The notes under the pieces were generated by a model. The model searched no databases and was not told where the DNA came from. It saw nothing but the letters and a program-made list of their open reading frames with translations. From Octopus sinensis (taxonomy: Eukaryota), in NCBI RefSeq assembly GCF_006345805.1, contig NC_043000.1:133424001-133488000 (forward strand): DNA of 64,000 nucleotides, read 5' to 3'. Both the position numbers and the translations under genes were made by a program. Numbering within the stretch: position 1 is the first letter of the stretch; the number at the start of each line of letters is the position of its first letter. Positions 261 through 33,641 of this stretch are shown here, in pieces.

Positions 261-355
261 ATTGATGGAGCATTAGCTGCTATTGATTCCACTCAAGAAA
301 GCCAAATCAGTGAACGGTTTAAAATTAAAGGATTTCCCACTGTGAAATACTTTCG
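261..355 (+). CDS. PDIA5: PDIA5-like internal exon (IDGALAAIDSTQESQISERFKIKGFPTVKYFR), 95 nt, phase 0-2
   Basis: ctacag acceptor, gtaag donor; thioredoxin C-terminal half with the cis-Pro GFPT motif; upstream exons lie outside the window. Confidence 0.9.
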
Positions 356-1355: not shown

Positions 1356-1421
1356 CAATGGAGAATATATGTGGGACTTCAATGAAAGAAAAGCTGCTGA
1401 CATTGTTTCCTTTATGAAAGA
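1356..1421 (+). CDS. PDIA5: PDIA5-like exon (NGEYMWDFNERKAADIVSFMK), 66 nt, phase 2-2
   Basis: ttttcag/gtaag sites; frame continues from the previous exon. Confidence 0.9.
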
Positions 1422-2860: not shown

Positions 2861-3000
2861 TCCCAAAGAACCACCACCTCCACCTCCACCAGAACCCAAG
2901 TGGGCAGATACTGAGAGTGATGTTCATCATTTGACTGCAGAAAACTTCAAAACTATTCTGAAGAAGAAGAAACATAGCTTAGTAATGTTTTATGCTCCAT
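2861..3000 (+). CDS. PDIA5: PDIA5-like exon (DPKEPPPPPPPEPKWADTESDVHHLTAENFKTILKKKKHSLVMFYAP)
   Basis: atttcag/gtaag sites; poly-Pro linker and KKKKH.LVMFYAP are characteristic of PDIA5. Confidence 0.95.
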
Positions 3001-3141
3001 GTAAGCATTAGCTCATTTTTCGCATTCAGTAACATCTTGATTGATTTAATTTTTCATTTGTGTGTCTTACATTTTGAAATACACTTCTTTGTGTAACACT
3101 CTTTTAATGTATTATATTTTTTTGTATGGTGAAGTGATTAT

Positions 3142-3568
3142 AGGCACAGGAGTGGCTGTGTGGTAAGTAGCTTGCTTACCAACCACATGGTTCCCAGGTT
3201 CAGTCCCACTGCATGGCACCTTGGGCAAATGTCTTCTACTATAGCCACAGACCGACCAAAGACTTGTGAGTGGATTTGGTAGATGAAAACTGAAAGACGC
3301 CCGTCATATATATGTATATATATATGTGTGTGTGTGTGTGTGTATGTTTGTATGTCTGTGTTTGTCCCCCCAACATCGCTTGACAACCGATGGTGGTGTG
3401 TTTATGTCCCCGTAACTTAGCGGTTCGGCAAAAGAGACCAATAGAATAAGTACTAGGCTTACAAAGAATAAGTCCTGGGGTTGATTTGCTTGACTAAAGA
3501 CGGTGCTCCAGCATGGCCACAATCACATGACTGAAACAAGTAAAAGAGAGTAAAGAGTAAAGAGAGTA
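3142..3568 (+). mobile_element. SINE family A copy
   Basis: aligns along its length to 510-924. Confidence 0.8.
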
Positions 3569-5724
3569 TTCTATTACAATTATTTAATCTTTCATTTTGT
3601 TTTTCTGTTAACTAGTTTAGTAAAATTTTCTTATAAATTCATTTTGCTTCTAAAAACTGGCTAATTCCTCTTTGTAGTCAATATCTGAAATATTGTCCCT
3701 CAAATTACCAATTCCTATCAAATAGCTTTCTCCCATTTTGTTTGTACTCATTAATTATTTCCTTGATACTTTTATTGAATGGTAATTTCTTTAGTTCCTG
3801 TGGAGTACTACAGCAATGAAATACCTGTTCATATGAAACTCAAATGTGTCTTTGCAATTTTTATAATGTACGTGCAGGTGGCACGTAAAAAACATTTCCT
3901 ACACTCTTGGAGTAGTTGGCATTAGGAAGAGCATCCAGCCATAGAAACCTTGCCAAATCAGACTGGAACTTACCAGTTTTTAGTCAAACTGTCCAACCCA
4001 TGCCAGCATGGAAAGTGGACGTTAAATGGTGATGATGATGCTAAGGCATGGTTGCGTAGATAAGAAGTTTTTTTCTTAATCATGTGGCTTCAGGTTCAAT
4101 CCCACTGTGTGGCTCCTGAGGCAAGTCTTCTATTATAGCTTTGGGCTGACCAATGTTATGTGAAGGAGTTTAGTAGACAAAATCTGAAAGAGCCTGTCAT
4201 GTATATTATGTGTGTGTGTGTGTGTGTGTGTGTATGCCTCTGCATGAATGTTTACAGCACACATGGAACCATGGCTATGAATAACAACATTGCCTTTTTT
4301 GATTGGGGTGCAAACAATGACGACATTGGTTGACATTTCCTGTTGAAGAATCATCCGCTTTCTCTGTGCTTTCAAATTCCTCTGGGATAAAAAAATCCCT
4401 TATTTGAAAAATAGTTATGGTTTTGCTACAAGGAGAACCAATGCCTGTAAAAATCCTACTTCAGTTAGCTTCTATCTAAGCTATGCTTTCATGGAAATGC
4501 AAACATTAAGCAAAATGAATGAGAGAACAGTCAAATGAATAACTGAATGTTCAGTCTGAGACAATATTGTTTGCTACCAGTATCTAGTCTTGGAAAAGAA
4601 AAAAGCAAGAAAATTTTCTAGAATGACTTGGTATTGTTTTGCTGCACTATAGACTCAACTCTTCTAAGTAGAGCAAGCTAGATCAATTTAGCACCCATGT
4701 AATTAGCCCCCATGCCAGTGGTACATAAAGCGTGCAGGGCTTCACAGAGGCAATGACAAATGACTGAGACCTTTGGCAATATGCTGTGCTTGAGAAGGAA
4801 GCGCCATCAAGACATGTGAAATTGTAGTTATAGCAGATACCGAAATTAGGCAACTGGCACCCACGCTGGTGGCATGTAAAAGCACCCATTACACTCTTGG
4901 AGTGGTTGGCATTAGGAGGGACATCCAGCTGTAGAAACCATGCCAAATCAGACTGGATTATGGTGGAGTACCTCAGCTTACTAGCCCTGGTCAAACCATC
5001 CAACCTATGCCAGCATGGACAAATGAATTCTAAATGAAGATGATGATGATGATAATCTAACTCTTGTCATCTTGATATCCGTTGTAGCTAAAGTCAGTCT
5101 TAGAAATGAATTTGAATCAAGACACGTCTATCCTCTGACATGCTTCTAATCTTTATGATAAGTATTACAAAATTTAATTCATAAATTGCAACCTTTACAA
5201 TTGAAAGAGGAAAAAGATGAACATTTGCCAATGTTTCTGTTGTAATTCCTAGAATTGTTTTTAACAATGTAATCTATTTCCTCTACCCTAGGATAGAAGC
5301 CTTGCTTCTTTCATGCTTGATTTTAACATAAGATGTTAAAAAAAAAAAAAACTCAAGCAGTCCCATCGCCAAACCACCGTAGAAAGTATGGATAAAATAT
5401 TATTGGTATAAACAGCAAGCCACTGTGTTTGTTACTTAACTTGGTTAAATTCATTTTCAAATTATCAGAATGAGTCAAATGGTTCAAATTCAGACATTGA
5501 TTTTGATTGAATTTAAAGTTTCTTCATTTTCCATTTGTTCTTTTCCTGGCAGTGGATGATATATATATTGTATGTTAAGAAGGATTTTTTTTTCCTTTTC
5601 TTTTGGAGTATAGTTACATGAAATATCTTTCTTCTAAAATGATTTCTTTTGATATCTATTTGTTGTAATTCATAGCTTGTCCTAAGTAGTTATTGTAATT
5701 ATTAGTAATGCTATAATAATTAAT

Positions 5725-5965
5725 GTGGAGGCATGGTTAGGGTGTCAGCATCATGATTGTAAGATTGTGGTTTCAATTCCTGGACCGGGCGACGTGTTGT
5801 ATTCTTGAGCAAAACACTTCATTTCACATTGCTCCAGTCCACTCAGCTGGCAAAAATGAGTAACGCTGTGATGGACTGGCGTCCCATCCAGCCGGGGAGC
5901 TCATATGCTATAGAAACCAGGTAACTTGACCCATGAGCCTGACTAGGCTTTGAAAGGGCGCATTT
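5725..5965 (+). mobile_element. tRNA-derived SINE (family C variant), CpG-decayed
   Basis: matches the reverse complement of 59591-59838. Confidence 0.7.
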
Positions 5966-6030
5966 ATTTTTTATAATAATTAATAAACTGTAGTTAAGTT
6001 TCTCTGAAATCAAATACTTTATGCATTTAG

Positions 6031-6101
6031 GGTGTGGACACTGTAAGAAAGCTAAACCAGAATTCACAGAAGCTGCTTTACAATTGAAAGATGAACCTAA
6101 A
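6031..6101 (+). CDS. PDIA5: PDIA5-like exon with active site WCGHC (CGHCKKAKPEFTEAALQLKDEPK), 71 nt, phase 1-0
   Basis: catttag/gtaag sites; the W codon is split across the intron. Confidence 0.95.
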
Positions 6102-6782
6102 GTAAGTTAATTTTTGTCTTGTTTAAAACATAATTTTGCAGTTCTATTTCTTTTCGTTTTTATCTGTAATTTTGGAATTAGTAAATTACATAGAAATAGA
6201 TTCAGTGTAATTAAGATGCTCTGTTTTTGATGAATTGTGTAAGATCAAGTATCATATACGTAAATGTTTATTGTATATATTGACAACAGTTTTAAATATA
6301 CATTACTGATAAAGGAAGAACACTTGTGTGATGGCAATTAGTTACGAACACTACATTTTCTCTGTTTCTCTGTATACTGAACATTTCTAAGATTTGTCAG
6401 CTGAGATGAATGTGCCTTGCTGATAAGATCTAACAAGGCTGAAATATGTCTGTGGCTTCCACCAGTGGACTTTAGAAACAAGATCCTATCATAATTACAT
6501 TGATTTTATCTTACAAAAATTTGGATCAGATAATGTTATTGGAATTATCTCTCTTGCTTGTTGATTTATATTATAAACACATCCAGAATGAATTTTTGTC
6601 TTCTAAGTACACAGTTAATTTCAGTTAACTGAAGTTTTTCAACAAATTATATTACACATTCAAGTCTCTGTTGTTTGTGTGATAAATCCTTGTGCTGAAC
6701 TAATGATATTTCTTCTAACTAAAAATTTTATCGAAAATAGTTTAGATTATATCATTGTGTATTATTGTTATTTCTTTTTCAG

Positions 6783-6911
6783 CTTGCCATATGTGCTGTG
6801 GACTGCACAGAACATACTTCTTTGTGTACAGCTCACGATGTGAAAGGTTATCCTACCCTGAAGTACTTCAATTATGGCAAGAATCCACAAGACTACATGG
6901 GTGGCAGAACA
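6783..6911 (+). CDS. PDIA5: PDIA5-like exon (LAICAVDCTEHTSLCTAHDVKGYPTLKYFNYGKNPQDYMGGRT)
   Basis: ttttcag/gtaag sites; contained in ORF 6765..6980; GYPT cis-Pro motif. Confidence 0.95.
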
Positions 6912-7863
6912 GTAAGTGTTTTTTTTTCTTTTGTCTTCTACATATACTGTGGCATTAACAGTGATAGATACAATTTATGATTTAATGATTGTACTTGTTT
7001 GAGAATATATGAAAATAACTTTCATAAATAACTGCGCCAGGATCCAGCCTGATTTGGCATGGTTTTCTATGGCTAGATGCCCTTCCTAATGCCAACCACT
7101 CTTTGACTTGTGTTAGTCATTTGGCTGCAATCATGCTAGGTATTGTCTTGAAGAACTTAGTTGAACAAACACAAAAATACACTCCCAGACACAAATGCAT
7201 GAATATGTGGTTGGTTTCTACAGAATCTCTATTTACTAAATTCACTCATAGGGCATCGGTTGACCTGGGGCTATAACAAAAAGCACTTGCCCAACTTGCT
7301 TCACAATGGGACTGAACCCAAAATCATATGATTTCAAAGCAAGCTTCTTAACCATGTAGCCATATCTGTATCTATATATTCAAGCTTTTCTTTTATCAGT
7401 TTTTAAATGAATGCTTTCTTTTCCTTTCCTAGTTTTTGATAAGTCTCTGAAACATTTATTCTTAGGAAAATTTGTTTATTGGTTTTAAATTTCCAGTGTG
7501 TTTAATAGCGATGTGCTGCTATTATACACACTGAAAATAGGTTTTATTGTTTAATACTTCTATTTCTCTATCTTGGGTAGAGCATTATCCTTCTTCACTA
7601 CCTCCTTCTGACATTGAAATATTGATAAAATGTATGCATGATTCATTTTGTGCTTCTAATGTTGTGACAACTGCATCTACATTTCTAGACATGATAACTC
7701 AAATCTAACTCCACCTGACAATATTTGCTGTTTCCACTTCAGAATGTGGTAGCTGGTTTTAGGAAAGTTGCTTCAGTTCTCAATATTCTGTAATAGTTTA
7801 TAGTGAAAATATTTTCCAAAATAAAGTATTCATATGAATTATCCTGATTCCTGTCTTTTTCAG

Positions 7864-8059
7864 ACAGCAGATTTTGTAAATTTCTTGAAATCTCCAAATG
7901 CTCCTCCTACACAAGAACCAGTTCCTAAGATGTCACCACAAGAAGAATTTTGGCTAAAAGAAGTTGGGCCTTCTTTCAAAGATGTCAGTTTGTTATCTTC
8001 TATTTCATTTGACTACTTTATCAGTGATAATCCTTCAGCCCTAGTATTGTTCTATTCAG
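7864..8059 (+). CDS. PDIA5: PDIA5-like exon: linker and start of the non-catalytic extra domain (TADFVNFLKSPNAPP...NPSALVLFYS)
   Basis: tttttcag/gtaag sites; contained in ORF 7834..8082; only the 7864 acceptor keeps frame. Confidence 0.9.
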
Positions 8060-9074
8060 GTAAGTTCTGTTATTGTCAATAACAATTTTTTTTCTTATGA
8101 ATTTAGAAACGTTTGTTTGTTCTGTTAACTCTGGAAATAGTTATCAAGGCACTATTTTCAATCTTTCATGACTGTTGGTATTCATGTTCTCTCCAATGCA
8201 GTATGAAAGTATTAAACACTGCATTACAAGCTAACAAAACATTCCTTAGTGTTCCTGCTCCTTATAGTTATGAGCTGGTACCTCACTCATGGTACATATT
8301 TACAAGTGAATCAGTTTGATTTAAGTCTTTTTATTAGAGACACCACTTAAATCTAGCAAGAGAATATGAATCCTTGATTTTCTAGCCAGTAGGTCTGCAG
8401 TCTAAAGATTCAGCCATCTGTGACTCTCTCATCATAATTTAGTAATGTTAAAAGCATATATTTTTAACTTCCCAACTATTACAACTTACCATTATAATGT
8501 AGGAATGACATGTGTCTCATCTATAGTAAAGCATCTATTCTTGACCCTCTGTCATACTTTAGCCTCTCAGCACCTGGCATACTTTAGCCAATTCCCCTTT
8601 CCTAATACTTACCACTTAGTAATGCAAGGGCTCTTCCTCTTCCCTCTTCTTTTTAGTCTTGTAACTTGGTGACCTCACTAGTGCTGGTGGCATGAAAAAA
8701 AAAAAAAGCACACAATACACATTGTAAGGTGGTTGGTGTTAGGAAGGAAATCTGATTGTAGAAAACATGTTATAGCTGACACTGGAACTCAGCACAGCTT
8801 TGCAGCTTGCTGGATCCTGTTAAACTGTCCAATCCAATCCACCATGGAGAATGGACATTAAATGAGGATGATAATTTATATAACTTTTATTGTATGCTTG
8901 GCATGCTTTAACAATAGAAATATCATTATACTTTATGACAGCTTTCATTTTATTCATAGTTATTGCATTAAATTCTAGTTGAAACACAAGCTTCTTGTTA
9001 TTGTGAACATTTATTGGTGTGAACTGTTCTTTTTACCATTTTCATTGTTTGGTCTATTCTGTCTTTCATCATAG

Positions 9075-9142
9075 GCAAACACCCTGACACAGAACTTATG
9101 AAAGAGTTTTCCACGACAGCAACTTTCCTTAAGGCTGGAGAG
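9075..9142 (+). CDS. PDIA5: PDIA5-like exon (GKHPDTELMKEFSTTATFLKAGE), 68 nt, phase 1-0
   Basis: pyrimidine tract plus catag acceptor, gtaagc donor; phases bridge 8059 and 10388; positional equivalent of the 71-nt CGHC exon. Confidence 0.85.
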
Positions 9143-9391
9143 GTAAGCATCTAAAATATTTAATTTAGCTTCCATTAATAGTATAGTTGTTATAAGTGAT
9201 TTCAATTATCATTGCCAGGTTGATACATTTTGACCCATTTTGCACTATTGCAGGGATGAAGCACTGAATTGACAAGTCAAGCTAGAATGATTAGTTAGAT
9301 AAGTAATGCTATAAACCATATGTACTAACACTGCTTCTGTTTGATTAAAAACCATTGATGTATTCTCATTAAATAGCTTGTGCTAAGTGAA

Positions 9392-9965
9392 GGCATGTAG
9401 CGCAGTGGTTAGGATAGTCAGCTCACAATTGTAAATTCGTGGGTTCAATTCCTGGTGGCACAATGTGTGCTTGAGCAAGACATTTTATTTCACATTGTTC
9501 CTGTCCACTTAGCCGGCAAAAATGAGTAGTATATGTATTTCAAAGGGCACATTCTGTATGACACTTGAATCTTCCTAAGAACTACGTTAAGGGTGTGCAT
9601 GTCTGAAGAGTAGGCTGTTCAGTTGATTGGATCAACTGGAACAATCATCAGCATAGTGGAGGTACATGGCCTAGTGGTTAGAGCAGCGGACTTGCGGTCG
9701 AGAGATTGCGGGTTTGAATCTCAGACTGGGCGATGTGTGTGTGTTTATGAGCGAAACACCTAAGCTCCATGCGGCTCCGGCAGAAGGTAATGGCGAACTT
9801 CTGCTGACTCTTTTGCCACAACTTTCTCTCACTCTTTCCTCCTGCATCATGCAGCTCACCTGCGACGGACCAGAGTCCCATCCAGGTGGGGAACCTATAT
9901 GCCAAGGAAACCGGGAAACCGGCCCTAATGAGCCAGGTGTGGCTCAAGAAGGAACAAACAAATAA
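9392..9965 (+). mobile_element. Two adjacent tRNA-derived SINEs (9392-9655 and 9660-9965)
   Basis: the first matches 44135-44451, the second matches 60444-60752. Confidence 0.75.
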
Positions 9966-10387
9966 CCAGTGGAGTGCCAGTTTGCCCTGAGTTACAGTAT
10001 TTTGTTGTCTTATTTTTTTGATCTTCACTTAATCTTTCGCCTATGAAGAATATACAAAATATATTGGTAATATGTTTAAGTCAGCCAAATAAATCTGTTT
10101 AATTCTATGTTTTTGACAAAAAAGTGGCATATTATCTGTTGTTATATTCTAAGTGCTTGTTCTACCGAGGTCAACTTTTCGGGATTGATAAAATAAGTAC
10201 CAGTTGTGCACTGGGATCATGTAATCAACTGCTGGCCGTGTGCCAATGTTTGAACTCAGTATATTTCTTACTCAAAAACTCAACTGGCTTGTTTTATGAT
10301 ACATTGCAATATTGTTGTCAAAAACACCTAAGAATATTAATTATTCCTCAAACCAATTATAAATTCATTTTCTCATCCTTCTTACAG

Positions 10388-10469
10388 AGCACTGACGTTT
10401 TTGCTGCAGTGGACAGATATGCAGACAAAGATTTGGCAGATAAATTTGTTGGGTCAAGATCTCATGTCT
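10388..10469 (+). CDS. PDIA5: PDIA5-like exon (STDVFAAVDRYADKDLADKFVGSRSHV), 82 nt, phase 0-1
   Basis: cttacag acceptor, gtaagt donor; AAVD...LA.KF thioredoxin pattern. Confidence 0.85.
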
Positions 10470-11161
10470 GTAAGTTCTTATGTGTATTGTTATATTTTTC
10501 ATATTGGAATGTTTTGGATGAATTTGCAAGTCCTGATGTTTGTGTGACAGGAGAAAATAATGTGTACACTTAGTAAAATCTATTCAAGCCGAAGAATTTA
10601 GTGTCTATGTAGGTCTTCATGAGGACCTTATTGTCAGCTCCACAGTCTATTCTTTCTAGTTTTTGGAAGTAACACAGCTGGAGTTCATGACTAGATACTC
10701 TTGGAAACATATGTTAAGAATCTGATTCTCATTGCAAAATCTGTTGAAGAGTAGCATGAAGAGTTTCAAATGAGGAAGAATGGTCTAGAGTTCAAAGACC
10801 TAAGATTCAATATGGCAAAGGTCAACATTCTAATTAATAGTGGAGAGTACAAAATAAGGAAAGTGGCCTTGTTTGATATGTGTGTGTGTGTGTGTGGTGT
10901 GTGTGTGTGTGTGGTAGTGGTGGCAAACTGAGAATGAATGCTTCCCTGCATTTGGTGAAGAAATACAGTCTTTATTTGCGGATTAATAATGCTGTGAACA
11001 TGGAGATAGATTTGGTGGAACACATGTAAATTGTAAATTTTTCTGCATGAAATCAATGATGTCATTGTTAATCTACAAATAAAGAATATATAGATAGATA
11101 GAGGGATAGACACACACACACACACAATGCACGCACACACGCGCATGCACACACACACACA

Positions 11162-11212
<51 letters not shown>

Positions 11213-11565
11213 ATCTATATGCTTAATGCAAAAGAACTCTGGCTTATTAACAGGGAACCAGGATTAATTAGCAATAGGGACAATGAAATCAAATAATCAA
11301 ATTATTGTTCATATTGATTTCTAGAAATAATAGTTAGTTTCTGTTACTTAGGTGACATTATTAGTAGTGGAGGGGAATGTAATGAAAGGATAGTAAGAGG
11401 GAGATATAGTTAAAAACAAAAATTACTGATAGCGGAGTTTTCCTTGTGCAAAAGATAGACTGTGTGAATCATATGTAAGAAACGTGAATGTTCCATAGTA
11501 GTGGGACTTTGGCACTGACTATGAAGGACTTGCAGAGGTTAAAGAGATGGGAATCAGTCAGATAT

Positions 11566-12004
11566 ATTTCTTTATTGCCCACAAGGGGCTAAACATAGAG
11601 GGGACAAACAAGGACAGACAAACGGATTAAGTTGATTACAACGACCCCAGTGCGAAACTGGTACTTTATTTATCGACCCCGAAAAGATGAAAGGCAAAGT
11701 CGACCTCGGCGGAATTTGAACTCAGAATGTAGCGGCAGACAAAATACCGCTATCATCATCATCATTGTTCGACTGTGGTCGAGACAATGGAATTTACCAT
11801 GCTACGCCAGACTTCACGGTCCATCATGGCATTACGGAGGTCCTGTTGCTGGATGCCTGTATCCCTGGAGATTACATCAGGGTAGGAGAGTGTGCGCCCT
11901 CTGGTATTGCGAGTAGATGGTTTCTAGAGGAGAAGAGTAGAAATTACTTCTTTTTCCGCTAAGCATTTCACCGACGTGCTAACGATTCTGCCAGCTCGCC
12001 GCCT
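11566..12004 (-). mobile_element. SINE family E with 12-bp TSD (tcagtcagatat)
   Basis: TSD at 11554-11565 and 12005-12016; interrupted by an RTE fragment. Confidence 0.8.
11753..11955 (-). mobile_element. 5'-truncated RTE-type LINE 3' end nested in a SINE
   Basis: minus frame GRTLSYPDVISRDTG...AMMDREVWRSMV then (GAT)n tail; ccgcta duplicated on both sides. Confidence 0.7.
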
Positions 12005-12386
12005 TCAGTCAGATATGATCTACTGAGTGTACTCTGTTAACTTATATGAAGGAGAAGAGCACAAGTGATCTGAGAGCGTAGAAGCATATTTAAAACATTG
12101 ACTGGTGTATGCAGAAGAGACACCTGCATTGGTAGAGACATCTAATGTGAATGGGTGATGAATGTTGGATAGAAAAAGTGCCATGTACTGATGGTGGAAT
12201 GTACCTGCAACAAAAGAAGACATGAGAAGAACTGATGAGGACAGATCTCAGGCTTCTCAGACAAGGTAACAGAAGTTTGTAATGTGTGGTGATAAGGTGT
12301 TATTATGCTAGTATTAAAAAAGGGAGATTGAATTACTGAGGTCTGTGTTGTTTTATAGCTGGGCACCCATATGATTACCTATTATA

Positions 12387-12620
12387 TATTTCTTTACTGC
12401 CCACAAGGGGGCTAAACATAGAGGGGACAAACAAGGACAGACAAAGAGTTTAAGTCGATTACATCGACCCCAGTGCGAAACTGGTACTTTATTTATTGAC
12501 CCCGAAAGGATGAAAGGCAAAGTCAACCTCGGCGGAATTTGAACTCAGAACGTAATGACAGATGTAATACCGCTAAGCATTTCGCCCGGCGTGCTAATGT
12601 TTCTGCCAGCTCGCTGCCCC
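12387..12620 (-). mobile_element. SINE family E with TSD ttacctattata
   Basis: TSD at 12375-12386 and 12621-12632. Confidence 0.75.
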
Positions 12621-12933
12621 TTACCTATTATATTTTATAAAGTACTATTACTGTGATTTTTGCTCTAAATTAAGTTGTTAAATGAGAGATCCATGTCCAA
12701 GAATCTAATAGGGTTGTTGTTGAATAAGTGATAATTTCTAGAACTTTATATCTAAGAATATATCTGTTGAATGTGTGTAAGTATCAAAACGTTAATGACT
12801 TGCAAATTCAACATGTTACATCTAATAACAGACATGTTACATGTAATTTATTGACCATGAGAAAATATCAATTTAATGACTGATACTCTGCCACTGCTTC
12901 CCACTTCTATCTTTAATTTCAATAATGGTTTAA

Positions 12934-13155
12934 CCCTTTTGTTACCATATTTCTTTTGAGATGCTCTGTTTTTCTTTCAATTAATTTTAGATATAACAAA
13001 GAATTTAGTAAAATAACTTAGTTATCATTAAGCTAGTGTCAGGAACATAAATTGTGACTAAGGTTTGGTGGAAGATTTTAATTCAAAACTTATGAAAACA
13101 AAACATTTGTACTAAAGAGCTAGAGCTGGTTTCAGCTGGGTTGGTAACGAAAGGG
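12934..13155. mobile_element. piggyBac-like MITE
   Basis: TTAA on both sides; 14-bp TIRs CCCTTT(T/C)GTTACCA. Confidence 0.75.
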
Positions 13156-13529
13156 TTAATTCTTAACCATTCTGCTTTCATCTGAGTTTTGTTTTATCTA
13201 ACTCACTGCTGTTCTGAGTTGAAATTCTGTTCAGAATCAGTCTACTTTCCATCCCCTGTCAATAAACTAAGTACCAGTTATATATTGGGATACATACAAT
13301 TAAACACCCACTCCTTGTAAAACTTAATTAGATCTATTCTTAAAGAGACATCATGATTCAATGTTTTATTCTATGCTATAGTAAGTGTGTATAATAATAG
13401 AATGTTGAATTGTTTATCATTGGTTTATTCTTAAGAAAATTCCATCTGTCTGTTTTTTTTTCATTTTTAAATCTTTTGTTTTAACTTACTCTTGTTTTTC
13501 TTTTTCTACTTTTTCCTTTTGATTTATAG

Positions 13530-13542
13530 TGAAATATTTCAA
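13530..13542 (+). CDS. PDIA5: 13-nt microexon (tgaaatatttcaa) encoding (L)KYF(K)
   Basis: long pyrimidine tract plus ttatag acceptor, gtgagt donor; supplies exactly the phase 1-to-2 shift and the KYF motif needed between 10469 and 14993. Confidence 0.8.
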
Positions 13543-14221
13543 GTGAGTATTCTATTATTTTTCGATTTACTGACTTTAAACAGTATGTCCTTTGGTCCTG
13601 CTCTTAAACCACTGCACAACTATTTATTTAGAAATTGTATTTAAATACCTATCTTTTTGCCACATTGTTGATAATCTATAATATTTTTCTGATTCCATTT
13701 ATGTAACACTATTATAATTATGAAACAAAATGCCAGACATAATCTATTATACTCTCAACATTAATGATATTTGAAAACAATTGACGGATAAACTATGGAA
13801 CTAAATCAAAGTTATAATCTATTACAGATACATTTATTTCATATAATTTTTAGGACATTTGATTGGAGAATAGATATTTCAATTTAAGAGTCATGTAAAC
13901 ATATATTTATTGATATTTTGTTTTTAGATTCCACAGCTGAGTGTGGCTGCTACTGTAGTTTGTTCACTAGGTCTGGGGTTCAAATCTTGCCAAATGCATT
14001 TTTCTCTGATATGAAAGTACAGCATATTACCAACATAGGCATACTATAGCAGAATATTATTATGTGTGGATTATCCTTTCTGCTCTATAGGTACAAGGCC
14101 TGAAATTTAGTGGGGAGGAGATCAATGTAATTGACTCACCCATCCCCTTCAAAATTGCTGGCCTTGTGTCAAAAATTAGAAAGAATTATATATGGATTAT
14201 GTCTTTGATTTCATTTTATAT

Positions 14222-14602
14222 TTGAGATTGTTGGCCGATACCAGCGCCGCCTTGACTGGCTTCCGTTGCCGGTAGCAGGTAAAAAGCACCAATCTGATCG
14301 TGGCTGTTGCCAGCCTCGCCTGGCACATAAAAAGCACCCACTACACTCACAGAGTGGTTGGCGTTAGGAAGGGCATCCAGCTGTAGAAACACTGCCAGAT
14401 CAGACTGGAGCCTGGTGCAGCCTTCTGGATTCCCATATCCCCGGTCGAACCATCCAACCCATGCTAGCATGGAGAACGGACGTTAAATGATGATGATGAT
14501 GATTATTCTTTCAATGTTTTATGCAATAATTTTAATATAATGGCGGTGCCCCAGCATGGCCACAGCTCATAAGCTGAAACTAGAATCAATCAATCAATCA
14601 AT
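14222..14602 (+). mobile_element. Family B repeat (14222-14502) and an isolated CR1-type 3' tail fragment (14542-14602)
   Basis: GGCGGTGCCCCAGCATGGCC plus stem-loop plus (AATC)n. Confidence 0.65.
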
Positions 14603-14992
14603 CATAATCATTAAGTGATGGAAGCTAACTAGTATTTTCCCATGGACAATTGTGCATAGTTCTTTCTAGAGTAGGTCCACTTTTTGATATGGAAATAAAA
14701 ATAACAACCCTCAAAGAAGAAGAGGCAACAAATGTATAACAAAGAATATTGTTTTCAAAGGTACTCTCCTAAGACTGCATCTTCAGTTCTACCTATATGG
14801 ATTTTTACATGTCAAGAATTAAAATCTTTTGGTAAAAAAAAAAATACAAATTCAAAAGAAATTATGTATTTCATTTGTCTTGGGAAGGTCATTACACCAA
14901 TAATATTAACACACACACACCAGTTATAGATTATGTTTGTTGTCTTATTTTGATATATAAACATGCTAATTTGTTTGATTTTTTTCTTTTAG

Positions 14993-15058
14993 AAATGGAG
15001 AAGCAGTGTCAGAATGTATGGGTAAAACTGTTAAAGAACTGTCAGAATTTATTATGGA
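14993..15058 (+). CDS. PDIA5: PDIA5-like exon (NGEAVSECMGKTVKELSEFIM), 66 nt, phase 2-2
   Basis: ttcttttag/gtaagt sites; same length, phase and NGE...FxM pattern as exon 1356-1421. Confidence 0.85.
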
Positions 15059-17127: not shown

Positions 17128-17649
17128 CATCTTTATACCTAATTTATAAATGATTTTGATACCATTCATAGCTGTCTGTGCATTTTTATTTTATTTTGCT
17201 TTCATTAGCTGCTATTTTGTCGCAGATTGAATGACCATACAGAGGCTTTGACTCAGCTTATTCATGGACTATTCAGTTACAGCAGTGGTGTGACCCAATC
17301 CTACTCTGTGCTAGAATTTTTTCTGTTTATTATTTTCAAGCCTTTTATTTCTTTATTTTCTTGTGGGAAAATATTAGAGCAGCTAAAAAGAAACCAGTTT
17401 TCTATACAATGGCTTTGTGTCTCAAACTTATAGGAAAGTTGTTTTGAAATGACAAAGAAAGGCTATCATCAGGAGTCCATATTTGTTTATTTACCCACAT
17501 TGATTTCAACCATAATCATTCAACCATATAGACTCCAGTTGTGATTTTAGTCTGTTGCTTATTTAAGTAATTATATTGAAGTTTTTCTTTTGAAAAGGGT
17601 ATTAACTCAGCAGTTTACACCAGTGTGTGTGTGTGTGTACACGCACACA

Positions 17650-18146
17650 CAAAAGCTGTTGGAGACTGGTCAACAAACTCTTGAGAGGGTTGGTGCTGGA
17701 AGACCATATGTGTGGTAGTAGATTTCAACTCCTTATCTCTGGAAAGACTCAAAAGGGGTTGTCAGATAATTTCTTTGACTTCACCAGCCCTAATTTCTGG
17801 TCTCCTCATACTTCTGATTGTAATTCCATGGATTGCTATGTGTGGGATGCAGTTGAGAAAGATACCAACCACACTTTCTTCGACACCAAAACTGAACTTG
17901 TGGCCAAGATCAAAGAGGTGTTTGAAGATTTTCACAGGGACATAATGAGGAATGCATGTTCCAGGTTCTAGAGTCATCTTGAGGCCATGCTGGAAGCTGC
18001 AGGTGACTACTTTGAGTGAACTGCTATCTCTCAGCCTTAATGTAGTTGATCTTTTGATTTAAAAAAAAATACTTATAGTTTTGGTTGGGATATTGTGTTT
18101 TATTTTCCTTTTTATACAAACTGTCAAATTTAGCCTGAACACCCTG
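17650..18146 (+). mobile_element. Tc1/mariner maT-type (DD37D-like) transposon 3' remnant
   Basis: SDNFFDFTSPNFWSPHTSDCNSMDCYVWDAVEK; terminal tttagcctgaacaccctg resembles a CAGGGTG TIR. Confidence 0.7.
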
Positions 18147-18229: not shown

Positions 18230-18522
18230 AGTAGGTGAATGAATTATCCTATGTTTATCGTCAGCATGGAAAATTCGTTTAACCGAAACCTGGGTAGCAA
18301 ATTCACATCAGAAACACGGTTGAAGCGACCTGTCAAGGGTAGAAACTCCGGGTTCATGTGCATAAATTTGTGTGTTGTATATGAATAAATGAAAGAATGG
18401 AGTCGAACGAAGATGTTAACAAAATTCCTTTACTCTCGACATATGTTTCGAAGACAGCATGTTTTCATTCCAAAGGAATAAAGGGTGCATTATGCAATCT
18501 TCTGTTGAGAGAGGCTCCCTTT

Positions 18523-18604
18523 CTTTCCTGATGAGAAGATTGCATAATGCACCCTTTATTCCTTTGGAATGAAAACATGCTGTCTTCGAAACATATGTCG
18601 AGAG
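18523..18604 (+). ncRNA. Minimal type I hammerhead ribozyme, copy 1
   Basis: stem I CTTTC/GAGAG; CTGATGA 18528-34; stem II GAAGAT/GTCTTC; GAAA 18588-91; stem III AC-ATAT-GT; GUC cleavage after 18599. Confidence 0.7.
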
Positions 18605-18717: not shown

Positions 18718-19008
18718 TAGGTGAATGAATTATCCTATGTTTATCGTCAGCATGGAAAATTCGTTTAACCGAAACCTGGGTAGCAAATTCACATCAGAAA
18801 CACGGTTGAAGCGACCTGTCAAGGGTAGAAACTCCGGGTTCATGTGCAGAAATTTGTGTGTTGTATATGAATAAATGAAAGAATGGAGTCGAACGAAGAT
18901 GTTAACAAAATTCCTTTACTCTCGACATATGTTTCGAAGACAGCATGTTTTCATTCCAAAGGAATAAAGGGTGCATTATGCAATCTTCTGTTGAGAGAGG
19001 CTCCCTTT

Positions 19009-19090
19009 CTTTCCTGATGAGAAGATTGCATAATGCACCCTTTATTCCTTTGGAATGAAAACATGCTGTCTTCGAAACATATGTCGAGAG
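19009..19090 (+). ncRNA. Minimal type I hammerhead ribozyme, copy 2
   Basis: identical to copy 1; CTGATGA 19014-20, GAAA 19074-77, cleavage after 19085. Confidence 0.7.
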
Positions 19091-21805: not shown

Positions 21806-22032
21806 CCCATTGGTAGATAATTGGCACTCATCATCATCCAGTAACACTTATAACCCAAATGCAGCTAACTTCAAGAAAACATTATCTACAAACACACATG
21901 TCTTCGTGGCGTTCCATGTCACTAAATGCTCCAACTGTGAACAGATTAAAAATGAGTTTCTCACAACTGCAGAGGAAATGGTGAAACATAAAAGTTTTGC
22001 TTTTGCAGCTGTTAATTGTGATTTTAATTCAG
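21806..22032 (+). CDS. PDIA5: PDIA5-like exon, terminal thioredoxin domain with CSNC (DPLVDNWH...VTKCSNCEQIKNEF...AAVNCDFNS)
   Basis: ttttcag/gtagg sites; contained in ORF 21810..22052. Confidence 0.9.
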
Positions 22033-22157
22033 GTAGGTTTATTATTTTCTAAATATATCCCACAGGTTTTTTTAATACATATTCTTGTTCATGTGAAATA
22101 GGTAACTATTAATATACACTTATAAAGTATTAAAATCAATCAGAATATAACAGAGAC

Positions 22158-22597
22158 ATAAAAGCACCATCCGAGCATGATCGTTGCCAGGGCTGCTGAC
22201 TGGCTCCCATGCTGGTGGCATGTAAAAGCACCATTTGTGCATGATTGTTGCCAGTGTTGCCTTACTGGCACCTGTGCTGGTGGCACATGGAAAACAACAT
22301 TCGAGTGTGGTTGTTGTCAGTGCCACCATTCTGGCTCCTGTGCAGGTGGCACGTAAAAAGCACCATTTGAGTGTTGTCATTGCCAGTACTGCTACACTGG
22401 CCCTCATGCCGGTGGCATGTAAAATCACCCACTACGCTCTGAGAGTGGTTGGTATTAGGAAGGGCATCCAGCTGTAGAAACCTTGCCAGATCAGAATGGA
22501 GCCTGGTGCAGCCTTGTGGCTCGCCAGTCCTCAGTCAAACCGTCCATCCCCTGCTAGCATGGAAAGCGGATGTTAAACAACAATGATGAGGATGATG
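22158..22597 (+). mobile_element. Family B repeat with 5 internal tandem units
   Basis: repeated GGTGGCA.GTAAAA.GCACC; (GAT)n-like tail. Confidence 0.75.
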
Positions 22598-22949
22598 TCA
22601 TCTTCCACTGAGATCTTTGTCAAACAATCATCCTTCACAAAATATTGCTGTTTACAATTTCATATTCTGTAGTCATCAAAATTGACTTCTCTCATATCTT
22701 TTAACTCTTGTCTAATTTTTCCATTAATATTATCAATTTACTGTTTAAACTCTATTGTCATGACGTTCTAACTCTCTTTAGTGACTATTGGTATTGTCTC
22801 TGTGAAGTGAAATTTATTTAAATATATATGTAATATATATAGTCAGTGCTCTGTTAATAAGTTTTGGGGCTGAAAAGGGGAGAGCTTTCATTCTTAATGA
22901 AAAAATATTGTGAGTGATAAAAATCATGCCAGAAGTGATAAAAATCATG

Positions 22950-23400
22950 CCGAAAGTGATAAAAATCAAACAGCCAGTCAACATCATGGTGTTTGGAGTG
23001 ATCACAAAGATGGTGATGTTATGCCTCCATTCATCTTTCCACATGGCCTCAGACTCAACACGGAGGCCTACATCAAGTGCCTGGAGGAAGTAATGCTGTC
23101 TTGGGTGAAGAAGGTGGGTGCTGGAAGACCCTATGTTTGGCAACAGGACTCTGCACCATGCCACACAAGCAGGAGAACCCAGTCATGGCTGTCAGACAAT
23201 TTCTGTGACCACATCATCCCTAACATCTGGCTGCCTAACTCCCCAGACTGCAACCCCCTTCATTATTATGTGTGGAGTGTAGTTGAGCAAGAGGCCAACA
23301 AAATTCCTTGTAACAACAAAGATGAACTGAAGGCAAGGATTATGGCAGCATTCCCCAACTTAAAGAAAGAGACCATCCAGAAGAGTTGCAGGAGATTAGG
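22950..23400 (+). pseudogene. maT (DD37D) transposase fragment
   Basis: YVWQQDSAPCH...WLPNSPDCNPL(H)YYVW; 37 residues between the second Asp and the third position (mutated to His). Confidence 0.8.
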
Positions 23401-24316
23401 TGCATACTTTGATTAACTGCATTGCTTTTTGTTGAGACAAAGTAAAATAAGCTTTCAGTTCAAAATTGGACATTTCATTCTTAATGACCTACCATGCCTG
23501 ATCACTAAATCCACAAGTTTTTTTTTATCTTCTCTGTGTTTATTTTCTCATATTCCTTTCTGTTGAAGAGTGTAGGCTCGAAATGTAAAAGACTTTCTCA
23601 CTTTCCTGAGCATCAAATTAATACACCTGCTTATTCATACACCTGTCTTCGTCTTTTGCTTTTCTGTAAATTTCAACTATGTGTGTATATGTATGTATAT
23701 ATATATACATATATATATATATACATATATATATATGTATGTATATATATATATACATATATATATGTATGTATATATATATATACATATATATATGTAT
23801 ATATGTATATATATATATACATGTATGTATGTATATATATATATATATCATCATTATTTAGCGTCTGTTTTCCATACTGGCATTGGTTAGACAGTTTGAC
23901 TGAAGCTGGAGAGCTATACACAGTTCCAATTTGATCTGGTATGGTTTCTATGGCTTGGTGTATATAAATAAATACCCATTGCTTTTGATAAAAGTCAATA
24001 AGAAGCCACAAAATATAAACCCCTAAACACACACTTACTCTCACTTCAGATATGTGTTTATGCAATAATTTTTAGAGGGTGATGAAAGCTTAACATGTTT
24101 GTATTGAAATAGGATCAAATTTGGTGAATTAAATTGTCTATATGTCTTGTGTAATTTACTAGTGTTAGGTAATATTTACATTGTTTTACTGTATGTACAC
24201 AAAAGCATCATTCAGTTGTTGTATGAATTTAGTCCTCTACTTATAAACACTTTTGATGCAGTTAAAAAAAAAGGTATTATATAACATGTTTGTAAATTAT
24301 TACCTTGTATTTTCAG

Positions 24317-24459
24317 ATTTATGTATAACTGAAAAAGTAAAAGATTACCCAAGTTTCAAACTTTACAAAAATGGAAAATTCTCTCAGAATTATTCAGGTA
24401 ACAATCAAAAGAATAGCTTTGTCAAGTTCTTAAAATCATTTGTAAAAGAAGAGCTGTGA
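24317..24459 (+). CDS. PDIA5: PDIA5-like last coding exon (DLCITEKVKDYPSFKLYKNGK...FVKEEL*)
   Basis: ttttcag acceptor; YPSF cis-Pro motif; C-terminal KEEL ER-retrieval signal then TGA. Confidence 0.93.
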
Positions 24460-30925: not shown

Positions 30926-31499
30926 GGTTTTTTTTTTATGTAGTAGCCGGTGCCATGTGGAATATATGCGAAACGGTGCCGGGCAAAATTCGTGTGGAAC
31001 AGTTGATACAGTATTTGGTGTCGAGTGTGAAGCTGGTTTCGGCGGTTAATGTGAAACGTAGAAGGTTTTGAACTGGCTGCGAAAATAGAGAACTTGGCAA
31101 CGTAAAAAAGACGAAATGGTACCGTGAATTCAGATGTAACAAGAGTCCAGTCGGAAAAAAAGAGATAAAAAAAAAAGATAGAAGATAAATCATTAGACTG
31201 GTGAATAAAAGAAGAGCTCACCAAAAGAAGTCTACACATTTCAGAGGTAAATGAAAGAACTTTCTAAAAACTCTCTAAAGAACTTGTTTGTTTATTCCAT
31301 AAATGTTATTGGCCGCTTAATTAAAGTTCTCGTATTTTGGTTATACTTAACGATTCTGTTTGTTATTTTCAGCTCTTCTGACGTCTTTGATTACTGTTTC
31401 TTTCGCTATAAGCAATTTGGTTTGCTGAACTCGCCTACGCGGTTTTCTGAACTATCGGACACACAGACTGTTGCGTTGTAGGTGGTTTCGGGAGGCTGC

Positions 31500-32737
31500 G
31501 CGCAAAGCGTTCGACAGGGTTGACCATAATATCTTACTCTCAAAATTGACAAATGTTGGAATCCGTGGAAAACTTCTACACTGGATTAAGTATTTCCTGG
31601 CGAATAGAACACAACATGTTCTAGTCGATGGAGTCCACTCAAGCCCAGCAAAAGTCACCAGCGGTGTCCCCCAGGGGACTGTCTTGGGCCCGCTCCTCTT
31701 TATAATTTACATAAATGACCTTTCCAGTGTCGTACACCACTGCAAAGTGAAAATATTTGCTGATGACACTAAGCTCCAGCAAATCATCAATGAAGAAGCA
31801 GACAAAGATAAAAGAAGTACTCAACTCCAGTCTGATCTATATGCAGTGAGTCAATGGGCAGACAAAAACAAAATGAAACTGAACGAGGGAAAATTTGAGC
31901 TGATGCATTTTGGAAGAAAGTCCACACTAAAACAGCCATACTCTCTTCCTTCAGGGGAACCGCTCACGGCCTCTAACAATATCAGAGACCTGGGCATAAT
32001 TGTTGATGACAACCTCAGTTGGAGTGCACACATCAACAAGAAGGTCGATATAGCTCGTAGGATGAGCTCCTGGATCTTAAGAACCTTCCGGTCCATAGAA
32101 CAAGGTGTCATCATACCACTTTTCTCCTCCTTTGTACTGTCACACCTCAAATACTGCTGTCCACTGTGGTCTCCCCATGCAAGACAAAACATCTCGAGGA
32201 TTGAATCACCCCAGAGGGCACTCACTAAACGAATTGAAGGCATGACTGCCCTCGATTATTGGGACCGCCTTAAAGCCTTGAAACTCTACTCTCTCCAGCG
32301 TCGCCGTGAGCGGTACATCATTTGTACGAAGTGGAGAATATACCACCAACTTTGCCCAATCGACCTGAACATTAGATTCAAAGTTCATCCAAGGCTGGGA
32401 CCACGGGCCATACGTCCCCTGCCCAATTCAGGATCACACCATATAGGTACACTGTAACATAATTTCTTTTCCTCAACAGGCCCTGCCCTGTTTAACATTG
32501 TCCCGAAAGAGATCAAAGAGGAAAAGGATCCCGTCAACTTTAAACGGAGTCTGGACAGATTTCTTCAAGGAATACCGGATAAGCCACCCATACTTGGATA
32601 CAACTCACTCAACAAGAATTCACTACTTGAATGGACCATAAACAAAACTTGACTTAAACAGGATTTAGATAATCCTATCAGGTGGTGCTATTAAGTTAGA
32701 CACATCCTGGACCAATCTTTAGTCGAAACATACCTAA
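31500..32737 (+). mobile_element. 5'-truncated CR1-group LINE: reverse transcriptase and 3' end
   Basis: KAFDRVDH, SGVPQGTVLGPLLF, KIFADDTKL in ORF 31471..32457; frame resumes after the stop at 32457. Confidence 0.92.
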
Positions 32738-32832
32738 GTTTATATATATATATATTATATATATATTATATATATATATGTATATGTATAGTATATATAT
32801 ATATGTATATGTATATATATATGTATATGTAT

Positions 32833-32864
<32 letters not shown>

Positions 32865-32872
32865 GTATATGT

Positions 32873-32913
<41 letters not shown>

Positions 32914-32928
32914 GATATATATATATAT

Positions 32929-32962
<34 letters not shown>

Positions 32963-32974
32963 GTATATGTATAA

Positions 32975-33312: not shown

Positions 33313-33317
33313 ATATA

Positions 33318-33374
<57 letters not shown>

Positions 33375-33547
33375 TATATATGTATATATATATATGTATA
33401 TATATATATGTATATATATATATGTATATATATATATGTATATATATATATATGTATATATATTATATGTATATATATATATATGTATATATATATATAA
33501 TGTATATATATATATGTATATATATATGTGTATATATATATATATGT

Positions 33548-33580
<33 letters not shown>

Positions 33581-33641
33581 GTATGTATATATATATATGT
33601 ATGTATATATATATATGTAATATATATGTATATATATATAT

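What the first reader, a model, noticed from the sequence alone, without database searches (positions are those of the whole stretch)
13530..13542. 13-nt microexon apparently created by intron gain inside a duplicated 95-nt exon
Seen: exons 10388-10469 (82 nt) and 13530-13542 (13 nt) sum to 95 nt, the size and phase (0-2) of exon 261-355. The peptides are collinear (RFKIKGFPTVKYFR vs KFVGSRSHVLKYFK), and both are followed by a 66-nt phase 2-2 exon starting NGE. The microexon has a long pyrimidine tract and a GTGAGT donor. Inference: a new intron split the duplicated exon. Skipping the 13 nt would shift the frame and remove KEEL, so it could serve as an NMD switch. Automated annotation could easily miss it.
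Basis: partly seen in the sequence, partly recalled or inferred. Interest (0 to 1): 0.7.

Follow-up and report, generated by a model that had tools for sequence, protein, structure and literature searches.

The report
Ancient 13-base microexon in PDIA5-like gene
The 13-base exon is real, but it is an ancient microexon shared with sponges, sea anemones and snails. It was not made by a new intron; the neighbouring 95-base exon arose when the same old intron was lost.

Summary
Exons 10388-10469 (82 nt), 13530-13542 (13 nt) and 14993-15058 (66 nt) join in frame. They encode ...SRSHV-LKYFK-NGE..., collinear with the 95+66-nt pair at 261-355 and 1356-1421. The microexon is not a chance match. Its donor is the best of 258 GT sites in the interval. 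It is the only one of 128 in-frame bridging candidates with good splice sites. None of 3000 simulated introns matched it.

The gene is the 3' part of a multi-thioredoxin, PDIA5-like ER protein that ends in KEEL.

The intron-gain reading is refuted. The same 82+13+66 layout, with a near-identical microexon (TGAAATATTTCAA or 1-2 changes in most copies), occurs in six other genomes. These are an unidentified invertebrate (L001), the sponge Corticium, Nematostella, and the snails Plakobranchus, Elysia and Lymnaea. It occurs in the orthologue of this domain and also in the orthologue of the "95-nt" domain. The split is therefore ancestral, and the 95-nt exon is an intron loss.

All six public gene models I examined break at this junction.

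The NMD-switch idea is untested. Skipping gives an immediate TAA, which any 13-nt exon skip would tend to do. This is a new member of a known kind, of modest interest.

The parts
13530..13542 (+). 13-nt coding microexon TGAAATATTTCAA. It is phase 1 to 2 and supplies (L)KYF(K), the beta-strand that follows the cis-Pro loop of the thioredoxin fold.
   Evidence: It is conserved at 12-13 of 13 nt in six of the nine other microexons found in six other genomes.
13510..13529 (+). Polypyrimidine tract and AG acceptor of the microexon.
   Evidence: 82% pyrimidine over positions -20 to -4.
13543..13548 (+). GTGAGT donor of the microexon.
   Evidence: top-scoring of 258 GT sites in 10470-14992. All 10 microexons found have GTRAGT donors.
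10388..10469 (+). 82-nt exon, phase 0 to 1, encoding STDVFAAVDRYADKDLADKFVGSRSHV plus 1 nt. It belongs to the degenerate third thioredoxin-like domain.
   Evidence: An 82-nt exon with a phase-1 donor lies at the same codon in L001, Nematostella, Plakobranchus and Corticium (both domains).
10470..13529 (+). Ancient phase-1 intron, 3060 nt here. It is inflated by two copies of an interspersed repeat of about 190 nt and by (GT)n/(CA)n tracts. It has no terminal repeats or target-site duplication.
   Evidence: The orthologous intron is about 60 nt in Corticium, 172 nt in Nematostella and 342 nt in L001.
13543..14992 (+). Phase-2 intron of 1450 nt between KYF(K) and NGE. The paralogous domain has an intron at the same position (356-1355).
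14993..15058 (+). 66-nt exon, phase 2 to 2, encoding NGEAVSECMGKTVKELSEFIM.
261..355 (+). 95-nt exon of the paralogous active 'a' domain (IDGALAAIDSTQESQISERFKIKGFPTVKYFR). This is the derived, fused state (82+13) after intron loss.
   Evidence: The orthologous exon is split 82+13 in Corticium, Nematostella, Plakobranchus and Lymnaea, and the Elysia 'a'-domain microexon is also present.
1356..1421 (+). 66-nt exon, phase 2 to 2, of the 'a' domain (NGEYMWDFNERKAADIVSFMK).
2861..8059 (+). Exons 2861-3000, 6031-6101 (WCGHCK), 6783-6911 and 7864-8059. They encode the active a' domain and the linker into domain 3.
   Evidence: Pfam Thioredoxin E=2.7e-36.
9075..9142 (+). 68-nt exon of domain 3. It reads GKHPDTELMKEF... 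where relatives have WCGHCKxMKPxY, so the active site is lost.
   Evidence: L001 has a 68-nt CGHC exon at the same place.
21806..24459 (+). Exons 21806-22032 (CSNC motif) and 24317-24459. They encode the last thioredoxin domain, which ends KEEL-stop.
   Evidence: Pfam Thioredoxin E=3.3e-18.

Best explanation
Window 13530-13542 is a constitutive, obligatory 13-nt coding microexon of a PDIA5-like multi-thioredoxin ER protein that ends in KEEL. It encodes the core beta-strand (L)KYF(K) between the cis-Pro loop and the NGE turn of the third thioredoxin-like domain seen in the window. Unusually strong flanking signals define it: a long pyrimidine tract and a GTRAGT donor. Leaving it out shifts the frame into an immediate stop.

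The microexon and the phase-1 intron upstream of it are ancient. The 82+13+66 exon layout was already present, in both of the paralogous 'VDAT-type' domains, in the common ancestor of sponges, cnidarians and bilaterians. In the window's lineage the copy in the upstream 'a' domain lost that intron, which fused 82+13 into the 95-nt exon. The copy in domain 3 kept it, even though domain 3 has since lost its CGHC active site and its GYPT loop.

Shown: the sequence, frames and splice signals; the statistics; and conservation in seven genomes. Inferred: inclusion in mRNA, and the direction of change, which rests on parsimony.
For: 1. The exon is not a chance match and is the only workable bridge.

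2. L001, an unidentified invertebrate, has almost the same exon sizes. L001 reads 95, 66, 140, 71, 129, 193, 68, 82, 13, 69, 251, 146. The window reads 95, 66, 140, 71, 129, 196, 68, 82, 13, 66, 227, 143. Its microexon TGAAGTATTTCAA lies at the same place.

3. The same split is present in the 'a' domain of Nematostella (82-nt exon, then TGAAATACTTCAA), Plakobranchus (TGAAATATTTCAA), Elysia, Corticium and Lymnaea. It is present in domain 3 of Elysia, Corticium and Lymnaea.

4. All 10 microexons have GTRAGT donors.

5. Fused exons without the microexon occur in scattered lineages and domains, as recurrent loss would predict. They are the window 'a' domain, L001 'a', L002 'a', L005 domain 3 and cichlid PDIA5 'a'.

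6. Window domain 3 is homologous to the active domain 3 of L001 (32% identity, E=5e-14).

7. The intron has no terminal repeat or target-site duplication of the kind a recent insertion might leave.
Against: - No transcript or cDNA evidence for the window's species could be obtained, so inclusion in mRNA is inferred.
- The window's organism and L001's organism are unidentified, so the loss in the 'a' domain cannot be dated or assigned to a clade.
- The ctenophore Mnemiopsis has a different intron (before GFPT) and no microexon. The feature is therefore dated only to the sponge/eumetazoan ancestor.
- Window domain 3 gets no Pfam hit. Its fold is inferred from homology to L001.
Confidence: 0.88

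Rival explanations
1. One reading: after the domain or exon was duplicated, a new intron was inserted into the 95-nt copy and created the microexon as a lineage-specific novelty.
For: Within the window alone, the paralogous exon is unsplit at 95 nt while this copy is 82+13.
Against: The same intron and microexon occur at the identical codon and phase in sponge, cnidarian, gastropods and L001. They occur in both paralogous domains, including the orthologues of the 'unsplit' one. The intron ends carry no signature of insertion.
Confidence: 0.03
2. Parallel gain: the site is a proto-splice-site hot spot, and introns were inserted there independently in several phyla and in both domains.
For: Intron presence is patchy across lineages and domains.
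Against: This needs at least four or five independent insertions at exactly the same nucleotide. Each would have to sit next to a second conserved intron 13 nt away and leave near-identical 13-nt exons. Recurrent loss explains the same pattern far more simply. Loss of both introns together is seen in L005 and the cichlid.
Confidence: 0.04
3. The microexon is a regulated on/off switch. Tissue- or stress-dependent skipping produces a transcript with a premature stop that is degraded by NMD, tuning the level of the protein.
For: Skipping gives GTC|TAA immediately, with two exon junctions downstream. The nucleotide sequence of the microexon is unusually constant, including synonymous sites.
Against: Any 13-nt exon shifts the frame when skipped, so this is not specific evidence. 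Splice signals are strong and consensus-like in all 10 copies, which suggests constitutive use. Between the window and L001, the flanking introns share no recognisable sequence beyond the splice signals, unlike classical conserved AS-NMD cassettes. No expression data are available.
Confidence: 0.1
4. It is not an exon at all. Domain 3 is decaying, and the gene is spliced some other way or ends early.
For: Domain 3 has lost CGHC and GYPT and gets no Pfam hit.
Against: All 12 exons stay in frame through to KEEL with canonical sites. There is no alternative bridge with usable splice sites. The LKYFK|NGE sequence is perfectly retained, and the layout matches the orthologues.
Confidence: 0.03

Closest known systems
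PDIA5 (PDIR) family of ER protein disulfide isomerases
   Same: Tandem thioredoxin domains with WCGHCK motifs, proline-rich 'DPKEPPPPPPPE' linkers and a C-terminal KEEL. The best named database relatives are annotated as protein disulfide-isomerase A5 or A5-like.
   Different: After the a' domain, where vertebrate PDIA5 ends, this gene has two more thioredoxin-like domains. Sponge, snail and L001 genes have them too. Here the first extra domain is catalytically dead (GKHP in place of CGHC, SRSHV in place of GYPT), and the last has CSNC. Cichlid PDIA5 has no microexon: its 'a' domain segment is a single 162-nt exon.
Evolutionarily conserved, frequently misannotated small microexons of 15 nt or less, described systematically in plants (PMC8831610)
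   Same: An ultra-short coding exon inside a conserved domain, deeply conserved in position and size, and missed or mis-modelled by automated annotation. All six public models examined here break at the site.
   Different: This is an animal gene family. Conservation reaches sponges and cnidarians, and the microexon exists in two paralogous domains of one gene. A full-text search for 'microexon' with 'PDIA5' returned one paper, an autism GWAS by title; I did not read it.
Neuronal, SRRM4-regulated alternative microexons of animals (from general knowledge; not tested here)
   Same: Very short exons that need strong flanking signals to be recognised.
   Different: Those are mostly multiples of 3 nt, are alternatively included and modulate protein surfaces. 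This one is 13 nt, shifts the frame if skipped, and encodes a core beta-strand, so it is expected to be constitutive.
Alternative splicing coupled to NMD through cassette exons, e.g. in SR-protein genes (general knowledge)
   Same: Exclusion would create a premature stop upstream of the exon junctions.
   Different: There is no evidence of alternative use, and no conserved intronic flanks.

Membership tests
PDIA5-like multi-thioredoxin ER protein | Thioredoxin (PF00085) domains with CxxC active sites. | tested here: met
   the a/a' segment scores E=2.7e-36 and the last domain E=3.3e-18. WCGHCK lies at 6031-6101 and CSNC in 21806-22032.
PDIA5-like multi-thioredoxin ER protein | C-terminal ER-retrieval tetrapeptide (KEEL/KDEL type). 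| tested here: met
   ...SFVKEEL followed by a stop at 24457-24459.
PDIA5-like multi-thioredoxin ER protein | The closest named relatives are PDIA5. | tested here: met
   queried with domains 3-4 of the window's orthologue L001: the named hits are mostly PDIA5 or PDIA5-like (Musca, Corticium, Elysia, Plakobranchus, fishes), with some TXNDC5 further down the list. The window's a+a' core is 52-69% identical to the PDIA5-annotated Corticium, Plakobranchus and Elysia proteins.
PDIA5-like multi-thioredoxin ER protein | N-terminal signal peptide and b domain. | not testable with these tools
   The 5' part of the gene lies outside the window.
PDIA5-like multi-thioredoxin ER protein | The domain carrying the microexon is a thioredoxin fold. 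| tested here: inconclusive
   No Pfam hit at E<=0.01. However, it shows 32% identity (E=5e-14) to the active CGHC domain 3 of L001 over its full length and has the same exon layout.
Constitutive coding microexon | An internal exon of 15 nt or less with canonical AG/GT and strong signals. | tested here: met
Constitutive coding microexon | Required to keep the reading frame and the conserved peptide. | tested here: met
Constitutive coding microexon | Conserved in position, size and sequence in orthologues. | tested here: met
   10 microexons in 7 genomes.
Constitutive coding microexon | Present in mature mRNA. | not testable with these tools
   No transcript-derived sequence of this species, or of any species for which I fetched a microexon-bearing locus, was found.
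Recently gained intron | The intron is absent at that position in outgroup orthologues. | tested here: not met
   It is present in sponge, cnidarian, gastropods and L001.
Recently gained intron | Signature of the gain mechanism at the intron ends (target-site duplication, terminal repeats, duplicated AGGT). | tested here: not met
   no repeat involves the intron boundaries at 10470 and 13529.
AS-NMD regulatory cassette | Skipping yields a premature stop upstream of an exon junction. | tested here: met
   (GTC|TAA). Two junctions lie downstream.
AS-NMD regulatory cassette | Documented alternative inclusion and NMD sensitivity. | not testable with these tools
   No RNA data.
AS-NMD regulatory cassette | Conserved intronic flanks. 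| tested here: not met
   the window and L001 flanks align only as T-rich low-complexity sequence. Solid identity is limited to the exon and its splice consensus.

The most novel reading that the evidence does not exclude
The 13-nt sequence is nearly invariant. TGAAATATTTCAA is identical in a sponge, two sea slugs and this window, synonymous sites included. That constancy could reflect a second, RNA-level function. The microexon would then be a splicing-controlled gate, conserved for more than 600 million years, whose skipping sends the PDIA5-like mRNA to NMD, for example to tune ER folding capacity. Its retention in a catalytically dead domain would then be explained by that regulatory role.
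Probability: 0.08. Interest if true: 0.6.

Novelty: new member of a known kind. Interest (0 to 1): 0.35.

Why it matters
1. It corrects an evolutionary inference. An apparent textbook case of intron gain inside a duplicated exon is in fact intron loss in the other copy. A within-genome comparison of paralogues gives the wrong polarity unless outgroups are consulted.

2. It exposes a systematic annotation error. PDIA5-like gene models in Nematostella, Corticium, Elysia, Plakobranchus (two models) and Lymnaea (gene split in two) all fail at this 13-nt exon. The result is junk peptide or truncation in the middle of a thioredoxin fold. The motif AG-T[GA]A[AG][AG]T[ATC][TC]TT[CT]... -GTRAGT, lying between a G[FY]PT exon and a [DN]G exon, could be used to repair them.

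3. It adds a well-documented animal example of an ultra-short constitutive microexon retained since early metazoan evolution, present in two paralogous domains of one gene.

Tried and rejected
- a homologue search with the window's domains 3+4 gave one weak hit only. No cephalopod or close orthologues are in the protein database, so no direct check against an annotated or transcript-derived protein of this species was possible.
I used the single-exon translation 7864-8058 instead, and that opened the way to orthologous loci.
- no genomic record for the amphioxus protein P0002, so amphioxus intron positions are unknown.
- a search with the corrected Nematostella peptide, meant to find transcript-derived proteins containing GYPTVKYFKDGE from that species, returned no near-identical sequence. 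One search likewise found no transcript-derived protein matching any microexon-bearing locus.
- Alternative splice routes around the microexon (alternative donors and acceptors, other bridging exons) were rejected on splice scores and stops.
- I noted by eye a weak ungapped similarity (about 11 of 20) between the first bases of intron 10470 onward and microexon+donor, as a possible trace of a local duplication. I did not pursue it, because the ancient origin of the intron makes it irrelevant.
- The TE-insertion/target-site-duplication model for the intron was rejected. No boundary repeats exist, and the interspersed repeats lie in the interior.
- Pfam on transposase-like ORFs at 17606-17968 and 22901-23413, and on the repeat ORF at 11599-11913, gave nothing.

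Full report
**What is there**

The window is AT-rich eukaryotic DNA (36% G+C). Its + strand carries the 3' part of a multi-exon gene. I rebuilt twelve exons with canonical AG/GT boundaries that stay in frame to a stop:

| Exon | Length (nt) | Note |
|---|---|---|
| 261-355 | 95 | 'a' domain |
| 1356-1421 | 66 | 'a' domain |
| 2861-3000 | 140 | |
| 6031-6101 | 71 | WCGHCK |
| 6783-6911 | 129 | |
| 7864-8059 | 196 | |
| 9075-9142 | 68 | domain 3 |
| 10388-10469 | 82 | domain 3 |
| 13530-13542 | 13 | microexon |
| 14993-15058 | 66 | domain 3 |
| 21806-22032 | 227 | CSNC |
| 24317-24459 | 143 | ends KEEL-stop |

One search listed the fifth exon six bases short. The sequence shows the donor at 6912.

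The product has tandem thioredoxin domains joined by proline-rich linkers. Pfam Thioredoxin matches the a/a' part (E=2.7e-36) and the last domain (E=3.3e-18). The named relatives are PDIA5 or PDIA5-like proteins.

The domain that contains the microexon (7864-15058, "domain 3") has GKHP where relatives have CGHC, and SRSHV where they have GYPT. It gets no Pfam hit. It still aligns over its whole length with the active domain 3 of an orthologue (32% identity, E=5e-14).

**Checking the observation**

- 82+13 = 95 nt.
- The phases are 0 to 1, 1 to 2 and 2 to 2.
- The peptides are collinear.
- A 66-nt "NGE" exon follows in both copies.
- There is a long pyrimidine tract and a GTGAGT donor.

This is not chance:

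- The donor at 13543 is the best of 258 GT sites between the flanking exons.
- Of 128 in-frame bridging candidates, it is the only one with usable signals on both sides.
- None of 3000 simulated introns gave a 13-nt AG...GT segment matching the paralogue's peptide as well.
- No other of the 453 such segments in the whole window, on either strand, comes close.
- Skipping it yields GTC|TAA. Alternative donors that would bypass it score -3.5 to -9.4, and alternative acceptors hit stops.

**Bringing in relatives**

A word-indexed search with domains 3+4 found nothing useful. An exhaustive search with the exon 7864-8058 peptide found two kinds of hit. One was a 1307-aa amphioxus protein with about ten thioredoxin domains (P0002). 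The others were short exon-level ORFs from genomic contigs. Fetching those contigs gave L001, a 20-kb piece of an unidentified invertebrate genome.

L001 carries a clear orthologue with the same a, a', 3, 4, xDEL architecture and almost the same exon sizes. L001 reads 95, 66, 140, 71, 129, 193, 68, 82, 13, 69, 251, 146. Its domain 3 is still active (CGHC, GYPT). It is built from three exons:

- an 82-nt exon ending ...GYPT+T|gtaagt;
- a 13-nt microexon TGAAGTATTTCAA, with acceptor ttgtcttaacag and donor gtaagt;
- the next exon, which starts DGKEAF.

The window's core is only 66% identical to L001. This is therefore conservation across a large distance, not a close relative.

**The decisive comparison**

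Annotated PDIA5-like proteins from other phyla show junk or truncation exactly after G[FY]PT:

- Nematostella: "GYPTGTSYMDGEFAF".
- Corticium: "GFPTVCVCVCLSH...RDGKFAF".
- Plakobranchus: "GFPTGTWGVQIKKKK...RDGEFAF", and a second model that runs into junk.
- Elysia: "GYPTQKVLRKV...".
- Lymnaea: a model ending "GFPTCK", and the gene split into two models at the upstream domain.

I fetched the loci. In each there is an upstream exon that ends one base after the G[FY]P[TS] loop codons. It is 82 nt in Nematostella, Plakobranchus and both Corticium domains, 79 nt in Elysia domain 3, and was not measured in Lymnaea. Then comes a 13-nt exon and then the DG- exon:

| Species | Domain | Microexon |
|---|---|---|
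| Nematostella | a | TGAAATACTTCAA |
| Plakobranchus | a | TGAAATATTTCAA |
| Elysia | a | TGAAATATTTCAA |
| Elysia | 3 | TGAAATTCTTTGG |
| Corticium | a | TGAAATATTTCAA |
| Corticium | 3 | TAAAGTATTTCAA |
| Lymnaea | a | TGAGGTATTTCAG |
| Lymnaea | 3 | TAAAGTTTTTCAC |

All ten microexons, counting the window and L001, have GTRAGT donors.

Fused exons without the microexon occur in several places:

- the 'a' domain of the window, L001 and L002;
- domain 3 of L005;
- cichlid PDIA5, where the whole segment is one 162-nt exon.

The ctenophore Mnemiopsis has a different intron and no microexon.

**Interpretation**

The microexon exists in both paralogous domains of a sponge and of gastropods. It also exists in the 'a' domain of a cnidarian, at the same nucleotide and phase. 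So the 82+13+66 layout predates the sponge/eumetazoan ancestor and predates, or accompanied, the domain duplication.

The 95-nt exon at 261-355 is the derived state, produced by precise loss of the phase-1 intron. The microexon is not the product of a gain. Independent gain would need many insertions at one nucleotide in two domains. Recurrent loss is observed directly and explains the patchy pattern.

The intron here is long (3060 nt) because it has accumulated interspersed repeats and microsatellites. Its ends carry no insertion signature.

**How it works**

The 13 nt supply codons for (L)KYF(K). From general knowledge of the thioredoxin fold, this is the beta-strand that follows the cis-proline loop and precedes the NG turn. 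The fold cannot form without it. The frame also collapses without it, so it should be constitutively spliced. Its recognition presumably relies on the strong flanking signals seen in every copy.

Inclusion in mRNA is inferred, because no transcript data were reachable. The NMD-switch idea is formally possible, since a premature stop with two downstream junctions would result. Nothing specific supports it. The splice sites are strong, and the intron flanks are not conserved between the window and L001.

**Comparison with what is known**

The gene belongs with PDIA5. It represents an apparently ancestral longer architecture, with two more domains than vertebrate PDIA5.

The feature is one more case of a deeply conserved, ultra-short coding microexon that automated pipelines miss. 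This class has been described systematically in plants (PMC8831610, found). A full-text search for microexon plus PDIA5 returned one paper, an autism GWAS by title, which I did not read.

**Verdict**

- "Real microexon, easily missed" is supported.
- "Intron gain" is refuted in favour of intron loss in the paralogue.
- The "NMD switch" is untested and unlikely.
- Novelty: a new member of a known kind. Interest is modest. The main value is as an annotation fix and as a cautionary example for inferring intron gain from paralogues alone.

Noticed in passing
window 7864-15058 (exons 7864-8059, 9075-9142, 10388-10469, 13530-13542, 14993-15058): The third thioredoxin-like domain is catalytically dead. 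It has GKHP in place of WCGHC and SRSHV in place of the G[FY]PT cis-Pro loop, and it gets no Pfam hit. Its reading frame, exon layout and LKYFKNGE strand are nevertheless intact. The orthologous domain is active in L001, the snails and the sponge. Domains 3+4 are only 29-37% identical to any relative, against 44-69% for the a/a' core.
   Followed up: partly
window 261-24459; L001; L010; P0002: The architecture ...a, a', 3, 4, xDEL is shared by the window, L001, gastropods and a sponge, whereas vertebrate PDIA5 ends after a'. Amphioxus has a 1307-aa version with about ten thioredoxin domains. The ancestral metazoan PDIA5-like protein may have been longer than the vertebrate one.
   Followed up: partly
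P0047 (Nematostella), P0027 (Corticium), P0070 (Elysia), P0072 and P0160 (Plakobranchus), P0141 and L012 1-3241 / 6001-11175 (Lymnaea): Six public gene models are wrong at this junction. They show junk peptide, truncation, or one gene split into two models exactly where the 13-nt exon lies.
   Followed up: yes
L001 929/930: The intron after ...MFYAP+T in L001 starts GCAAGT. This is a GC-AG intron at a position where the window and the other domains have GT.
   Followed up: no
window 18239-18528 and 18725-19014: Two near-identical copies, 486 bp apart, of a segment with matching ORFs (INERMESNEDVNKIPLL...; MNYPMFIVSMENSF...). They form a tandem duplication inside the 6.7-kb intron between exons 15058 and 21806.
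   Followed up: no
window 11562-11752 and 12384-12575: Two copies, 91-96% identical, of an interspersed repeat of about 190 nt lie inside the intron upstream of the microexon. (GT)n and (CA)n tracts lie at 10879-10913 and 11110-11199. Similar peptide-level repeats recur elsewhere in the window.
   Followed up: partly
window 31471-32457 (+): An ORF of 328 aa with a reverse-transcriptase domain (Pfam RVT_1, E=1.3e-20), probably a non-LTR retrotransposon fragment. Long TA/TG-rich microsatellite arrays follow at about 32800-34260.
   Followed up: partly
window 17606-17968 and 22901-23413 (+): ORFs that resemble the C-terminal part of Tc1/mariner-type transposases (e.g. ...QQDSAPCHTS...NSPDCNPLHYYVW...) lie in introns of the gene. 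Pfam gave no hit, so the resemblance is unconfirmed.
   Followed up: partly
L011 501-653 and 1801-1974 (Mnemiopsis): The ctenophore 'a' domain has a phase-0 intron between ...GVK and GFPT. This position was not seen in any other species examined, and there are no introns at the microexon boundaries.
   Followed up: no
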